Source: Vitrella brassicaformis CCMP3155
Lineage: Eukaryota > Protista > Chromerida
Direction of reading: 5' to 3'
Assembly: GCA_001179505.1 (NCBI GenBank)
Contig: CDMY01000929.1
Location: 124,001-188,000 of the forward strand
Length of the DNA: 64,000 nt
Below the pieces are notes generated by a model that worked only from the letters and a program-made list of their open reading frames with translations, was not told the DNA's origin and searched no databases. Made by a program: the position numbers and the translations under genes. Below, in pieces: positions 28,599-34,606 of the stretch; positions within the stretch are counted from its first letter, which is position 1, and every line of letters begins with the position of its first letter.

Positions 28599-30919
28599 AT
28601 GAACATTGGTGGCCAACCGTCTGTTACCGGTCCGCCATCTTCATTCAGCCTTCTTCGCCTCATGATATCGGTATCGCTGCTCTTCACTGTCCTGACCAAC
28701 GTCATTCTCTTCTGCTGGCACACCACGTGGGTGCAGACGCTGCACAACATAACCGACTCCCACAACCTGGAGTTTCTGCGCCGGACCAATCTGAAGGGCT
28801 GGACCAACTTACAGACCAAAAGTCGCCCTGTCAGCCGCCCAACGCCTCCCCTCCCCGCCACTGCATCCCTCAACACCACCGGCGATACGAGGGCAGTAGC
28901 ACCTATTCCATCGTCTGCCAATCTGTCGGCCGCCCAGGTCCCTTCTGGCTCTGGGACATCGGCAAAGGCCGCCGACCTGCCGCCTTTGAGGATTGCATCG
29001 TCACACGAGGAGACCGACAGACGAGCCGAACTGGCCCATCAGCGGGCTATCGACCAAGAGAAAGAGCGGGAAAAGCAGAGACAGGAGGAATGGGCACGAG
29101 AGAGAGAGAAAGCGACGGAGATGAAAAAAAAGCGAGAAAAGGTGATGGAGAGGAACAGAGAAAAAGACGACATAGACGAGAGGCAGCGGTCAGAGGTGCC
29201 CCTACCAACGGACAAGCTTCTGGTCAACGCGACGGAGACAGACGACTACATTTCGATCGAGGGCCTCTTCGGCTCTCTCTCGCTGCTCAAGCGTGAGATC
29301 ACGCCCACGTGGGTGCAAGAGTTCTACCGTTCAGAGGCCTTCTACAAGGTCAATCGCAACAGACGAAAGAGAGCCCCTCAGCCAAGAGAGGAGGGTCGGC
29401 TGTACATGGTGACTGCCTGCGACAAGTATCAGTACGAAGGCCTCATGGCGCTCATCACCTCCATCTATCGCAACACAAAGGTGGGAAGGAGTGGCAGCTC
29501 CCTCTTGGCTATGGGCTACCCAAGTATGCTCTCCCTTTTCGGCCTGTGTGTGTACTATCAGCATCACGACCGTCTGACGCTGTATGTGTTTGTTGAGCGT
29601 GACGACCCTCCCTGTCTGCGGGAGACCGTGGCGTGTCTCGGGTATGAGAAAGAGCATCCAGACTTCAAAGTGGAGATCTTGCCCGTCACCCCATCGCAAG
29701 TGCGCGTCGCCAAAGGCAAACACAACCAGGTAAGTGCGTGAACAATGCAAACAGGCATCCGCTGAATCGCTTAAAAGCGGACGGAGTTGAACACTTGCTG
29801 TCAGGTGTTGTTCAACTCCGTCCGCTTTTATTTGCCGGAGCTGCTACCATCGCACGTGCACAAGGTGCTGTGGATTGACGCAGACACCATAGTGAGAGAT
29901 GATATCGCATTCCTGATCGACGGGGCCATACAGCGGGCTGTCCACAACGAGGAGCTCACCATCACGCCCACCTCAATCAACACGACCCTCAATGCCAACA
30001 GCCAGAGGAGGCAGCTCGTCCCAGACGACACTGAGGGCGCCACAGCCGCCAGCATGAGCGACCCCATCATCCCAAAGCACTGGAAGGAGTTTCCCATGAT
30101 CTCGGTCATTCGGAGGGGCGCCTACAAATCGCTGGCGGACCTGGTGCTGCCCGAGCAGGTGGAAATGCTCGACAGGGGGCTGGGGGTGCATGTCGGGCTC
30201 AAAATGTTCAACGCCGGCATCTTCGTGGCTGACTTGGAGGCGTGGCGCCAAAACAGGATAACGGAGGAAGCGGAGATGGTCATCCACTTCCTCCGTGCCA
30301 GCAATGTCACCAAATTCTCGGGCATGTCGACGGTCGAGTCGAGCCAGCTGACGCTCAACATCCTGTTCCACAAACGCGTTAAAGAGCACTTGGAGGAGCT
30401 GTGGAACGTCCTCTACCTCGGCCGGAACAAACCTATCCCCGACGCCCTTTTGCGCAGCTCCCGCATCTTGCACTGGAACGGCAGACGGAAGCCCTGGTTT
30501 GCCTTCGGCTCCTTCAGAGAGTACTGGACGCCGTACAGAGTGGACGACTGCCACGCATGCCCCCTCTGGAGGTAGAACAGGACCAAAGAAGGAAGGAGAC
30601 ACGACACATGTGCTTTGTCGATCTTTCTCTCCGCTGGCCGTGTGTCGTGTCCAGGTGTGCTGACCAGATGTGTGCGCTGCACGAGCAAGTAGAGGAGCTG
30701 CATGAGATCTTTGAGTCTCAGCAGTCGCGGATGCTGCACTGGGGCCACCGCACCAACAATGTCGTGTTCATGCTCGAGGGGCTGCTCAAAGACTACGTGA
30801 AAGAGCAAGAGGAGAGAAGAAAAGCCGAGATGGCGGCAAGCAGCACACAGAGACCAACGGAGGGCGCGAGGGCGGCAGCCACAAACGGCCCGTCCTCTGA
30901 GCCGCTTCTGACTGCGTGA
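28599..30919 (+). CDS. Glycosyltransferase family 8 (GLT8D/GATL-like), type II membrane protein with a C-terminal coiled coil
   Basis: N-terminal TM, LMALITSIYRNT, RFYLPELLP..HKVLWIDADTIV (DxD), FNAGIFVADLEAWR, SQLTLNILF, WNVLYLG and ILHWNGRRKPW. Confidence 0.88.
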
Positions 30920-31718
30920 CAGGCTACCTTTATTGGGGTTTGCGTGGCCACCTGGCGGATGTGTGTACAAAGCGTGTCTTTGTACAGCGATGCGTATACC
31001 TTTGTCCTCGTCAATTGACCGATCGTGTGCATGCATATGTGATTTGTAAAGCCTTCGAGACGATCGGATTACACATCATACATACATACATACGTATATG
31101 CATACATCCGTATGCCACCCACAACACGGCACGACCAACCAGATATTAATTCTCTCTCGTGTGCACGGTGCGTACGTTGGTCTGTCTGTCTGTCTGTCGT
31201 GTGAACCGGATGACTGAGAATGAAGACATTTGGCACCATGTGGTATCGATCGTCGATGCTCCAGGAATATTATGGTCAGGTGTTCGTGTCATCACATGCG
31301 AACATGGCACAGGAAGCTCAGTCCTCCGCCCGTCCGCGCGGATTGATGAACGGAACGGTCACCTCCCACCACAGCTCTATTGCTAGAGGCTGTGGCGGTG
31401 CCTAACCATTCCATTCGACAATCCGCACGTACGAGGAATTTTGCTTCCGAGAACTTGTGCACGCACGTCGTGTTTGCTTCAAACCATCATGCAGCAAATC
31501 ACGTCATGTACGGTGACTGCACTCCTCTCTCTCTGTGTACACTTCTGCACAACGCGCCGGCTGAGCCGGCAAACAAATCGACACACATGGAATTCATGAA
31601 CAGAAGACTCAGCCCCCCAGCCCATCAAGACAATTGGTCAGTCAGCATCCAAAAGTCAAGTCAGACGCCGTCCAAAGGCAAAATGCAAAACTCTCCCCAC
31701 ATCTCTCCTTTATCCCCC

Positions 31719-32945
31719 TCACGCACCCGGCTTGCTGTCCGTATCATTCGCCGCACCAGAGGGCGCTCCTTCACCGGCACCAGGCGTAGGTGGCTCAGAC
31801 AGACGCAGACGCTTCACACGAGCACTGCATTGAGGACACCAGACACGCACATAGAGGGAACAATATGAGTGCAGTCTGGATGGATGGATATGTGTGTTGT
31901 GTGTCGTCGTACTGACCCATTTTCGTCATGGTCGGTCTGTGTGGTCGCGAAGGGCTCCCTCGTGTCCTTGGGAGCATCAGATGAGTCCACCTTGACAGGC
32001 GAGCTAACGTCGACGTCGTCACTCTGACCGATCTCGCGAGTGCCCGGCACGCACACCTTGTCGAAGAACTGCTGCACAACTGTCAGCACCTCACTGCGAT
32101 GGCTCTCGGGGTCGACCTTGCTGCCTGTCAGATCTGATCAGACACGCAAAGATGCAGCACGTCAGAGTGTGTGTATCAACAGCTGCGCGGTGGCGTCTTG
32201 CAGTGACTCACACACCTGCCTGGACGCCGATCAGAAACAGCTTGCCGCTAATCATCATGGGCGACATGTGGAGTAGGTTCCAGAAGGTGGTGCCGTCCGA
32301 CCGTTTGTTCCACACCTTGGTGACCAGGTCCTCCACCTTGAGCTTGTCCTCTGACGCCTTGACCTCGTTGATCCACCGCCGGATCCGCTGAATCGTTGGC
32401 CGATCTGTGTCCTCACACTGCATGACTGAACACAACACACCCACAAGGGCAGGCGAACCAATGCACAGAGGTCTCGCTGGGCTGTGTGCTCGTGTTTGTC
32501 CTACAGCGGCAGTTTCTTCCGAGAATGTCGGCCATGGGGAAACCAAAGAGCGAAGCCACGCCCTGGCTGGCAGCGACGATGGGCTCGTCAGGCAGCGAAG
32601 GGTCACACACCACGGTCGAAAACTGCAGCCCGCTGACGCCGCCACTGGCGTCTTGCAGGACCGATCTGACGTCCACGGCGTCATCCTTGAGCGTGTTCTT
32701 CATCTTGCGCTCGGAAATCCTGGCAAGCGCATCAATTCTCCTCGCCACCTCACCATCTTCGACCACCTTGACCATTTCATCGCGCAGCGCCGTCGGGTCT
32801 GCACACCCGCCACAGCCACAGAGGAATATGTGACAGATATATGTGTCCGAGAAATCCGAATGACTCCACCTCCGATTTGCCTGACGTCGAACTCATCAGC
32901 TTGGAGCCGGACTCGCTTACGCGACTGCCGCTTGAAGCCACTCAT
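31719..32945 (-). CDS. Stand-alone LOV-domain (PAS) blue-light sensor, 291 aa, 5 exons (alternative ATG at 32966)
   Basis: Exons are 32945-32870, 32798-32505, 32425-32216, 32133-31913 and 31793-31719, all phase-consistent. The peptide reads VVCDPSLPDEPIVAAS...ILGRNCRFMQCEDTD...RIRR...WNKRSDGTTFWNLLHMSP...FLIGVQADLT. Confidence 0.9.
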
Positions 32946-33201
32946 GCTCGCACACCCTTCCTGCATCTTTTTTTCTGCAACAGTCAAGCGCTGGCTAAGC
33001 TCGCAGACGCCCCGAGCTCCGTGAAATCGCTCTCTCTATCTGGACTGCCGGGAGAGGAAAACGCGCGGTACAAACCGAACGCCTACAAACGCCCTCGTGG
33101 CCTCTGCCCTCAGATCTCCTGATTCAACTCGGATCTCCAACTCGCGAGCACACGTCCCACTGCGCGCTCTGCAGCGTGGCTGGCAGTTGGCTGCGAGCGC
33201 C

Positions 33202-34606
33202 ATGGATCAGTTCTTCAAGACCAAACTGTGCCCCTGGTACACGAGCNNNNNNNNNNNNNNNNNNNNNNNNNNNNNNNNNNNNNNNNNNNNNNNNNNNNNN
33301 NNNNNNNNNNNNNNNNNNNNNNNNNNNNNNNNNNNNNNNNNNNNNNNNNNNNNNNNNNNNNNNNNNNNNNNNNNNNNNNNNNNNNNNNNNNNNNNNNNNN
33401 NNNNNNNNNNNNNNNNNNNNNNNNNNNNNNNNNNNNNNNNNNNNNNNNNNNNNNNNNNNNNNNNNNNNNNNNNNNNNNNNNNNNNNNNNNNNNNNNNNNN
33501 NNNNNNNNNNNNNNNNNNNNNNNNNNNNNNNNNNNNNNNNNNNNNNGGGGATGCGTGTGTACGAAACGGAGCAACGGCTCGGCATCTCCCTCTGCTGCTG
33601 TGGTGGTGGCAGGCACGTGCCTGAAGGGCTTCTACTGCACTTACGCGCACTCGCCAGAGGAGCTGAGGCCTGCCAAGAACCTGACCAAAACGAAACTGTG
33701 CCAACTGTGGCGCAAGGGCGCCTGCACACAAGGAGCTTTGTGCAACTATGCCCACGGGAGGAACGAGCTGCGATGCACTGGTGGGCGCAGAAAGAAGCAC
33801 AGGCGGAGGCTGCGTATGGGTATGCCGTCACGGGTGGGTGTGTGCCTTCTGTCTGTGTCAGACGACTACTACAAGACTCGTCTCTGTCGCTTCTGGCAGC
33901 GTGGCGAGTGCCTGGCCGGACAACAGTGCAGGTACACAAGGCGCCCACATGCGACATGTCACGCCGGCACGGGCCCATTCTGATGTGTGATTGTTGCTGC
34001 AGGCATGCGCACGGCTTGGAGGAGCTGCAGCCGCGCAAGTACCGGTTGACGGAGCGGGAGAAGACCAAAGCCAAGGCCCGCAAACATGCGCGATTCCTGG
34101 AGACCAGCGGCCCTCAGCAGGTCATCTACCTGCCGTCGGATCACACGCCCGACCTCTCGACGCCCTCCCCCTCCCCTCCTCCCTACGACTTCCACGCCCC
34201 CACCGTGCTGAAGCTGCCGGCCATGGTGCTGCCGATGCGCGGCAACGGGCACAGCCAGAGCAACGCCATGATGGGTGTGCAGCCCGACACGCCCCTGCCC
34301 ATGTCCTTCCACGAGTGGGGACAGTCGACCGCATCGGCGGATGAGGGCAAGACCCACTCGACGCCCTCACTCTCGTCCATGCCGTCGCCCTTCTCGTCGC
34401 CTCTAGGGCCGTCTGCTGCTGCTGCTGCCGAGAGTGCTGCTGGGGCTGTCGGTGGTCATGTTGGTGTGAGGGCCGCTGTCGATGAGAGTCTGTGTGTGCG
34501 TGACAAGAGCCACCACGTGCGAAAGACCACGGTAGACTTTGAGAGCGACTTGGCCTTCATAGCCAAGTCGACAGCTGCTCTGCTCAATCTCGATGACCAC
34601 CTGTAG
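33202..34606 (+). CDS. Tandem CCCH (C-x8-C-x5-C-x3-H) zinc-finger RNA-binding protein, at least 3 fingers; interrupted by an assembly gap
   Basis: FKTKLCPWY..., TCLKGFYCTYAHSPEELR, KTKLCQLWRKGACTQGALCNYAHGRNELR and [30 protein letters not shown], followed by a Pro/Ser-rich tail. Confidence 0.9.
33247..33546. other. Assembly gap (300 N)
   Basis: A run of N in the sequence. Confidence 1.

What the first reader, a model, noticed from the sequence alone, without database searches (positions are those of the whole stretch)
31719..32966. Hidden stand-alone LOV photoreceptor: an intron splits the GRNCR|FMQ motif
A 79-nt intron (32426-32504) interrupts the signature, and splicing yields GRNCRFMQ. 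All canonical flavin contacts are present by alignment to phototropin LOV2: the adduct-forming Cys (codon at 32509-32511), R and Q of NCRFxQ, R in RIRR, N in WNKR, N in FWN and Q of GVQ. There is no kinase, bZIP or F-box output domain. Instead there is a basic NLS-like start (KRQSRKRVR), a helical N-terminal cap, an insertion of about 8 aa before strand G-beta and a J-alpha-like helix (HRSEVLTVVQQFFDK). Established: LOV domains form a blue-light Cys-flavin adduct, and effector-less short LOVs (e.g. fungal Vivid) act by light-dependent protein binding. Inference: an uncharacterised blue-light signalling module in the closest photosynthetic relatives of apicomplexans, and a possible new optogenetic part.
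Basis: partly seen in the sequence, partly recalled or inferred. Interest (0 to 1): 0.78.

Follow-up and report, generated by a model that had tools for sequence, protein, structure and literature searches.

The report
Expressed stand-alone LOV blue-light sensor gene
This is a real, transcribed and correctly spliced gene of the alga Vitrella brassicaformis for a small blue-light-sensor (LOV) protein with no attached output domain; it is already in public databases under a generic name, so it is an ordinary but unstudied member of a well-known photoreceptor class.

Summary
A five-exon gene on the minus strand (ATG 32966, TGA 31719) has a 79-nt GT-AG intron (32426-32504) inside the LOV signature. 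Three assembled transcripts join 32505 to 32425 exactly, giving GRNCRFMQ.

The spliced 307-aa protein is identical to CEM37188.1 / UniProt A0A0G4H0U0 of Vitrella brassicaformis CCMP3155, named only "PAS domain-containing protein". So it is not hidden, but I found no study of it.

Pfam finds one PAS_9 domain and nothing else. All canonical flavin contacts are present: N128, C129, R130, Q133, R146, N170, N180 and Q199. A 9-aa insert lies between F-alpha and G-beta. The AlphaFold model has a confident LOV core flanked by A'-alpha-like and J-alpha-like helices, with disordered tails carrying two NLS-like basic motifs.

The only close relative is a Vitrella paralog (CEM00112.1, 42% identity), which this scan noted before on other DNA (s1-221703).

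In a LOV tree the two group with a large, largely dinoflagellate family of stand-alone LOV-like proteins rather than with aureochromes or phototropins. An AU test does not formally reject aureochrome affinity (p = 0.068).

Most likely it is an FMN-binding short LOV that signals by light-dependent dimerisation or partner binding. Photochemistry is untested. It is a new member of a known kind, of moderate-to-low interest.

The parts
32967..32984 (-). 5' UTR (minimum extent seen)
   Evidence: Transcript contig L009 reaches 32984 and X1 reaches 32973. An in-frame stop lies upstream of ATG 32966.
32870..32966 (-). Exon 1: Met1 to the first base of codon 33. Includes the basic NLS-like stretch K12-R20 (32907-32933).
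32799..32869 (-). Intron 1 (71 nt, GT-AG). Spliced in X1 and X8, retained in L009.
32505..32798 (-). Exon 2: N-terminal helices and the first half of the LOV core, up to GRNCR plus the first base of Phe131.
32509..32511 (-). Codon of Cys129, the predicted flavin-adduct cysteine.
   Evidence: The column is invariant in 60 LOV sequences.
32426..32504 (-). Intron 2 (79 nt, GT-AG, phase 1), which splits GRNCR|FMQ.
   Evidence: Exact joint in X1, X8 and L009.
32216..32425 (-). Exon 3: second half of the LOV core (FMQ ... GVQA). Includes the 9-aa insert, residues 152-160 (32337-32363).
32134..32215 (-). Intron 3 (82 nt, GT-AG).
31917..32133 (-). Exon 4: end of I-beta and linker, the J-alpha-like helix (residues 213-231, 32042-32098), and the acidic disordered tail.
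31825..31916 (-). Intron 4 (92 nt, GT-AG).
31719..31824 (-). Exon 5 coding part: disordered tail with the second NLS-like motif KRLR (residues 277-280, 31803-31814) and the stop codon TGA.
31255..31718 (-). 3' UTR (about 460 nt).
   Evidence: L009 reaches 31255 and X8 reaches 31318.

Best explanation
This is an expressed nuclear gene of Vitrella brassicaformis CCMP3155 for a 307-aa 'short' (effector-less) LOV photoreceptor.

Shown:
- The gene has five exons. Splicing of the 79-nt intron restores the GRNCRFMQ signature.
- The protein has a single LOV-type PAS domain with every canonical flavin-contacting residue, including the adduct cysteine C129.
- The E-alpha/F-alpha loop has phototropin length, as in FMN-binding LOVs, not the longer loop of the FAD-binding VVD/ZTL type.
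- The predicted core is a confident LOV fold, with an N-terminal helical cap and a C-terminal helix placed like A'-alpha and J-alpha of phototropin LOV2.

Inferred mechanism:
- Blue light forms the Cys129-FMN C4a adduct.
- The I-beta glutamine Q199 relays the change across the beta-sheet to the flanking helices.
- Their release or rearrangement changes self-association or binding to a partner protein.
- This probably happens in the nucleus, because K(K/R)X(K/R) motifs sit in both disordered tails.

With its Vitrella paralog it belongs to a mostly dinoflagellate (myzozoan) group of stand-alone LOV proteins. It is not an aureochrome or a phototropin.
For: - Splicing is seen in three transcript assemblies.
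- The model is identical to CEM37188.1 / A0A0G4H0U0.
- Pfam gives PAS_9 at residues 101-203, E 7.8e-12, and no other domain.
- The exon halves hit solved LOVs: aureochrome 1a at 2e-9, plus ENVOY, phototropins, YtvA and VVD, with contiguous numbering.
- The residue-by-residue alignment to phot2 LOV2 has no gap between NCRFMQ and TDR.
- P105, N128, C129, R130, N170 and Q199 are invariant in a 60-sequence LOV alignment.
- AF2 gives the core pLDDT >=90.
- Foldseek's listed top hits are all LOV domains; the best TM-score is 0.89, against CrPhot LOV1.
- VIA-align gives Z 16-17, and model residues 78-232 superpose on AsLOV2 398-542 including J-alpha.
- Transcript ends and neighbouring genes bound the gene.
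- The careful tree separates {this protein, the paralog, P0062, 18 dinoflagellate-type LOVs} from 52 other LOVs with support 100/98.
- The NLS-like motifs are at 17-20 and 277-280.
Against: - There is no biochemical evidence for flavin binding or a photocycle.
- The J-alpha-like helix is modelled only at pLDDT about 57-64, and the N-terminal helices at 65-81.
- The NLS reading rests on a four-residue consensus only.
- One transcript assembly retains intron 1. That would remove the N-terminal basic motif from any LOV product.
- The AU test does not reject grouping with aureochromes (p 0.068).
- No ortholog outside Vitrella was identified, so conservation of the flanking regions cannot be assessed.
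Confidence: 0.72

Rival explanations
1. The main product is a 267-aa cytosolic LOV protein that starts at Met41, because intron 1 is commonly retained. The N-terminal NLS-like segment would then be absent or regulated by alternative splicing.
For: Transcript contig L009 retains intron 1 while splicing introns 2-4. The public MMETSP-type ORF (P0001, 267 aa) starts at Met41.
Against: Two other transcript assemblies, from two studies, splice intron 1. With intron 1 retained, Met1 opens an 88-codon non-LOV frame upstream, which would hinder initiation at Met41. Contigs cannot give isoform ratios.
Confidence: 0.15
2. It is a flavin- or ligand-binding PAS protein that is not a photosensor in vivo, for example a redox sensor or a scaffold. 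Its LOV-like residues would be retained by descent.
For: The nearest large family, the dinoflagellate-type stand-alone LOV-like proteins, has replaced the Q of NCRFLQ with V, I or L in 126 of 126 motif occurrences. This shows that the clade tolerates departures from canonical LOV chemistry.
Against: This protein and its paralog keep every canonical contact, including Q133 and C129. No LOV-defining residue is missing.
Confidence: 0.08
3. It is a decaying or functionless duplicate of the other Vitrella short LOV gene.
For: A paralog exists (CEM00112.1, 42% identity). An earlier follow-up in this scan reported that the paralog's transcripts are mostly mis-spliced (not re-tested here).
Against: The reading frame is intact over five exons, all four junctions are canonical and used, transcripts occur in several data sets, and every catalytic or contact residue is conserved at only 42% overall identity to the paralog.
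Confidence: 0.04

Closest known systems
Vitrella brassicaformis paralog CEM00112.1 / A0A0G4ES35 (P0070; locus of earlier finding s1-221703)
   Same: It is 42% identical over 163 aa, including the region after the core. It is also stand-alone, has the same site of insertion between F-alpha and G-beta, has canonical Cys, Asn and Gln residues, and has an intron within 2 nt of the same place in the NCR motif.
   Different: It has a different N-terminus: no helical cap was found, and a Cys-rich alternative start is possible. Its tail differs. Its intron is in phase 2 within the Arg codon, whereas here the intron is in phase 1 within the Phe codon. It has FEN instead of FWN.
Dinoflagellate-type stand-alone LOV-like family (e.g. 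Durusdinium trenchii 'LOV domain-containing protein' P0248; Pyrodinium P0235). I found no characterisation in the searched literature.
   Same: The proteins are short (about 220-320 aa) with a single or tandem LOV-like PAS_9 domain and no output domain. They share the GL-x-FS lead-in to A-beta and an insertion at the same F-alpha/G-beta site. They lie on the same side of a 100/98-supported split in the LOV tree.
   Different: The dinoflagellate proteins read NCRFL(V/I/L)DPVP instead of NCRF(L/M)Q..TD. They have longer inserts and often an N-terminal MGC. Identity to this protein is only 24-33%.
Aureochrome 1a LOV (Phaeodactylum / Vaucheria; PDB 5dkk, 5a8b, 6i20, 3ue6)
   Same: It is the best sequence match among solved structures and among named proteins: 37-46% identity over the core. 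It also has a LOV domain with flanking A'-alpha and J-alpha helices that drive light-induced dimerisation.
   Different: This protein has no bZIP domain and carries a 9-aa insert. The tree places it outside the aureochrome clade, although the AU test does not reject aureochrome affinity.
Fungal Vivid / ENVOY and bacterial short LOVs (RsLOV, DsLOV, PpSB1-LOV, YtvA LOV)
   Same: These are effector-less or nearly effector-less LOV proteins that signal through N- or C-terminal helices and a change in oligomerisation. The structural matches have Z 15.6-16.4, and RsLOV aligns over model residues 75-233.
   Different: Nothing here indicates orthology. VVD-type LOVs have an extended E-alpha/F-alpha loop for FAD, whereas this loop has phototropin length. 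This protein has long disordered tails with NLS-like motifs.

Membership tests
LOV domain (flavin-binding PAS subfamily) | PAS fold (five-stranded sheet with helices C-alpha to F-alpha) | tested here: met
   Pfam PAS_9 at residues 101-203, E 7.8e-12. AF2 core pLDDT >=90. Foldseek and VIA-align matches to LOV structures: TM up to 0.89, Z 16-17, rmsd 1.5-2.9.
LOV domain (flavin-binding PAS subfamily) | GXNCRFLQ signature with the adduct-forming cysteine | tested here: met
   GRNCRFMQ in the spliced mRNA. C129, N128 and R130 are invariant columns.
LOV domain (flavin-binding PAS subfamily) | Remaining flavin contacts (equivalents of AsLOV2 Q454, R467, N482, N492, Q513) | tested here: met
   Q133, R146, N170, N180 and Q199 align to phot2 LOV2. 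N170 and Q199 are invariant and N180 nearly so.
LOV domain (flavin-binding PAS subfamily) | Binds FMN or FAD and shows the reversible 450/390 nm photocycle | not testable with these tools
   This needs purified protein and spectroscopy.
Short (effector-less) LOV proteins | No effector domain on the same polypeptide or transcript | tested here: met
   Only PAS_9 was found on the 307-aa protein, and exons 4 and 5 have no family hit. Transcripts of 1.3-1.5 kb end at 32984 and 31255. The neighbours are separate genes on the other strand.
Aureochrome | bZIP DNA-binding domain N-terminal to the LOV domain | tested here: not met
   No bZIP hit on P0151, whereas the aureochrome hits carry PF00170 / PF07716.
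Phototropin | Two LOV domains followed by a Ser/Thr kinase | tested here: not met
   There is a single PAS_9 domain and no Pkinase.
ZTL/FKF1/LKP2 | F-box and Kelch repeats after the LOV domain, and an extended E-alpha/F-alpha loop | tested here: not met
   No F-box or Kelch hit. There is no gap between NCRFMQ and TDR relative to phot2 LOV2.
Vivid-type fungal LOV | Extended E-alpha/F-alpha loop that accommodates FAD, and an N-cap with the Cys71 hinge | tested here: not met
   The loop has phototropin length, and the insert here lies after F-alpha instead. VVD matches only weakly by sequence (E about 5e-4).
Myzozoan (dinoflagellate-type) stand-alone LOV group | Falls with the family in a LOV-domain phylogeny, and shares the lead-in motif and insert site | tested here: inconclusive
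   The split has 100/98 support and the GL-x-FS motif and insert position are shared. However, the AU test does not reject an aureochrome grouping (p 0.068), and the family's NCRFL(V/I/L) hallmark is absent here.

The most novel reading that the evidence does not exclude
The two Vitrella short LOVs are the chemically canonical representatives of a myzozoan-specific clade of stand-alone LOV proteins. The dinoflagellate branch of that clade has expanded to thousands of sequences and lost the Q of NCRFLQ. This protein would then be a nuclear, light-switched adaptor in an unstudied alveolate blue-light pathway. It would also be a candidate for the kind of receptor missing from the account of blue-light-dependent zoosporogenesis in the sister chromerid Chromera velia (PMC10739334), where only cryptochromes were found.
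Probability: 0.3. Interest if true: 0.55.

Novelty: new member of a known kind. Interest (0 to 1): 0.3.

Why it matters
In the papers I could search, I found no description of a chromerid LOV protein. A 2023 study of Chromera velia found blue light essential for zoospore formation but identified only cryptochromes as candidate receptors (PMC10739334).

A canonical, expressed, effector-less LOV in Vitrella shows that the chromerid lineage has flavin-LOV sensing. It gives a tractable protein for testing, being small, single-domain and carrying all photochemical residues. It also links chromerids to a very large, apparently uncharacterised dinoflagellate family of stand-alone LOV-like proteins.

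As an optogenetic part it would be one more short LOV among many. Its value would depend on measured kinetics and on its mode of oligomerisation.

Tried and rejected
1. My first gene model used an intron-3 acceptor 9 nt downstream (91-nt intron, 304 aa). The transcripts show the 82-nt intron and 307 aa.
2. I first took P0070 for a Chromera ortholog. The cluster look-up shows it is a Vitrella paralog.
3. P0223, the only other word-search hit to the paralog, is a fragment with two LOV-like stretches and no insert. It is not a specific relative.
4. No homolog of the N-terminal 90 residues or of the C-terminal tail was found. In the 1.84-billion-protein search with exon 2, only the protein itself scored below 1e-30.
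5. I tried to assign the unnamed sister sequences to a taxon by looking for the dinoflagellate spliced leader in their contigs. None was present, so the taxon rests on the few named members.
6. The AU test of an aureochrome grouping was not rejected.
7. Rfam found nothing in 30000-34500.
8. Glantz et al. 2016, the main LOV catalogue, is not held in the library. I therefore could not check whether this protein is listed there.
9. The spliced protein has no single window reference, so I searched the exon pieces by reference until the public identical protein (P0151) was retrieved.

Full report
**Observation**

The gene lies on the minus strand. Reading the reverse complement and assembling exons gives an ATG at 32966 with an in-frame stop upstream. 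There are five exons, four GT-AG introns and a TGA ending at 31719.

Exon 2 ends ...GGA AGA AAC TGC CGC T and exon 3 begins TC ATG CAG. The Phe131 codon is therefore split (32505 | 32425-32424), and the mRNA reads GRNCRFMQ. The Cys129 codon is 32511-32509, as stated.

**Transcript evidence**

- Public runs holding this stretch fall into two sets. Some hold all sampled words (DNA). Others hold about 60%, the share expected of a spliced mRNA.
- I laid four of these runs on 30000-33240. Two transcript-like contigs from different studies (X1, 1293 nt; X8, 1312 nt) each skip exactly 32799-32869, 32426-32504, 32134-32215 and 31825-31916. All four skipped stretches have GT..AG ends on the minus strand.
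- The joint at the LOV signature has no positional ambiguity. The 8.5-kb contig of run X4 is colinear with the window, that is, unspliced DNA.
- A third assembly (L009, JGI sample 3300017148, 1484 nt) uses the same three downstream junctions but retains intron 1. It extends the transcript to 32984 and 31255.

**Identity**

- A search of 1.84 billion representative proteins with the exon-2 piece found one hit below 1e-30: a 267-aa MMETSP-type ORF equal to residues 41-307.
- Its cluster also holds a 307-aa protein, CEM37188.1 / UniProt A0A0G4H0U0, 'PAS domain-containing protein', from Vitrella brassicaformis CCMP3155. It is letter-for-letter identical to my transcript-based model.
- The gene is therefore already correctly predicted in the public annotation. 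'Hidden' applies only to a reader of raw DNA.

**What the protein is**

- Pfam gives one domain, PAS_9, at residues 101-203 (E 7.8e-12, threshold passed). Nothing else is found, either on the whole protein or on exons 4 and 5 alone.
- The two exon halves separately hit solved LOV domains. Exon 2 hits aureochrome 1a at 2e-9, then ENVOY, phototropins, YtvA and VVD. Exon 3 hits YtvA and phot2 LOV2. The numbering is contiguous across the intron.
- The printed alignment to Arabidopsis phot2 LOV2 places Q133, R146, N170, N180 and Q199 on the known flavin contacts.
- That alignment shows no length difference between NCRFMQ and TDR. This is the loop that is extended in FAD-binding VVD/ZTL-type LOVs.
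- It also shows a 9-residue insert (152-160) between F-alpha and G-beta.
- In a 60-sequence alignment, P105, N128, C129, R130, N170 and Q199 are invariant.

**Structure model**

- AlphaFold2 with that alignment gives pLDDT >=90 for the core (93-201).
- It predicts three N-terminal helices (34-46, 49-71, 76-88; pLDDT 65-81) and a C-terminal helix (213-231; pLDDT about 57-64).
- Residues 1-27 and 230-307 score below pLDDT 50 (bar two isolated residues) and I read them as disordered.
- Foldseek's listed top matches are all LOV domains; the best TM-score is 0.89, against CrPhot LOV1.
- VIA-align gives Z 16-17. Model residues 78-232 superpose on AsLOV2 398-542, and 75-233 on the whole short LOV of Rhodobacter sphaeroides. 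The flanking helices therefore sit where A'-alpha and J-alpha sit.
- The K(K/R)X(K/R) consensus occurs at 17-20 (KRVR) and 277-280 (KRLR), both in disordered tails. This is only a hint of nuclear import.

**Stand-alone status**

- The transcripts are 1.3-1.5 kb and end within the intergenic spaces.
- The upstream neighbour is a divergent CCCH zinc-finger gene that starts at 33202 on the plus strand and is interrupted by an assembly gap.
- The downstream neighbour is a convergent glycosyltransferase family 8 gene.

**Relatives**

- A word search with the full protein finds, apart from itself, stramenopile aureochromes (37-46% identity over the core only) and then bacterial LOV histidine kinases.
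- Re-scoring all fetched proteins with residues 41-240 singled out P0070 (120 bits): 42% identity over 163 aa, extending past the core, with an insert at the same site.
- P0070 is CEM00112.1, also from Vitrella CCMP3155, so it is a paralog. Its locus (L001) is the one this scan noted earlier on other DNA as a 209-aa Cys-rich short LOV (s1-221703). The upstream in-frame 33 codons are indeed there.
- Its intron sits 2 nt from the position here: phase 2 in the Arg codon rather than phase 1 in the Phe codon.
- I did not re-test the earlier claim that the paralog's transcripts are mis-spliced.

**Wider family**

- A quick tree grouped the two Vitrella proteins with a few unnamed sequences.
- A profile built from these found 2148 proteins at E <= 1e-10. 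Most of the 120 listed are 220-320 aa and carry only PAS_9 or no Pfam hit. The few named ones are dinoflagellate (Durusdinium trenchii, Pyrodinium) or from a dinoflagellate-bearing foraminifer.
- These share the GL-x-FS lead-in and the insert site. However, they read NCRFL followed by V, I or L in 126 of 126 motif occurrences, whereas both Vitrella proteins keep Q.
- A careful tree of 73 LOV segments puts {this protein, its paralog, P0062, 18 family members} on one side of a branch with support 100/98. On the other side are 52 aureochrome, phototropin, green-algal and bacterial LOVs. The two Vitrella proteins pair at 91/57.
- Forcing the pair into the aureochrome clade costs 23.9 log-likelihood units but is not rejected (AU p = 0.068). 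The affinity to the dinoflagellate-type family is therefore favoured, not proven.

**Literature**

- In the searchable library I found no description of a chromerid LOV protein.
- A 2023 paper shows that blue light is required for zoosporogenesis in Chromera velia. It reports finding only cryptochromes, with no Vivid or aureochrome homolog, in that genome (PMC10739334). That paper concerns the sister genus, not Vitrella, and I could not search the Chromera genome.
- The main LOV catalogue (Glantz et al. 2016) is not held.

**Mechanism**

Shown: the gene structure, expression, splicing, domain content, conservation of contacts and predicted fold.

Inferred from established LOV biology: FMN binding; formation of the Cys129-C4a adduct in blue light; relay through Q199 and the beta-sheet to the flanking helices; output by a change in self-association or partner binding, as in Vivid, aureochrome LOV and bacterial short LOVs. 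Nuclear location is suggested only by the basic motifs.

I put about 0.9 on a genuine LOV gene product, about 0.8 on a canonical photocycle, and about 0.45 on nuclear partner-switching as the output.

**Verdict**

This is a new, uncharacterised member of a known kind (short LOV photoreceptors) that is already present in public protein databases. Interest is moderate to low.

The most interesting angle is the link to a very large dinoflagellate stand-alone LOV-like family, for which I found no characterisation in the searched literature. The other is the missing blue-light receptor question in chromerids.

Noticed in passing
window 32799-32869 (intron 1); locus L009: One transcript assembly retains intron 1 while splicing introns 2-4. 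From Met1 this opens an 88-codon non-LOV frame. The LOV ORF then starts at Met41 (267 aa) and lacks the N-terminal basic motif. This could be regulated intron retention or just pre-mRNA.
   Followed up: partly
L001:4902-5800 (Vitrella contig CDMY01000295.1): The paralogous short LOV gene (CEM00112.1) has an intron 2 nt from the same place in the NCR motif and an upstream in-frame Cys-rich 33-codon extension. This is the same locus as earlier finding s1-221703.
   Followed up: partly
proteins P0003, P0005, P0083, P0106, P0119, P0224-P0337: A very large family (2148 hits at E<=1e-10) of short stand-alone or tandem LOV-like proteins. The named members are dinoflagellate. The Q of NCRFLQ is always V, I or L (126/126), inserts after F-alpha are long, and several of those inspected start with MGC, which could be an acylation site. 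I found no characterisation in the searched literature.
   Followed up: partly
window 31073-31198: A short dispersed repeat in the LOV-GT8 intergenic spacer. Many unrelated contigs in all four runs match only 20-27 nt at 31073-31105 and 31175-31205 and then run on unlike. Depth spikes there.
   Followed up: no
window 33248-33620: An assembly gap (run of N) lies inside the first part of the divergent CCCH zinc-finger gene, which starts at 33202 on the plus strand. That gene's model is incomplete here.
   Followed up: no
window 32967-33201: Only about 235 bp separate the LOV start codon from the start codon of the divergent CCCH zinc-finger gene. Transcript contigs of the two genes start at 32984 and 33020/33021, which suggests a compact bidirectional promoter.
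   Followed up: no
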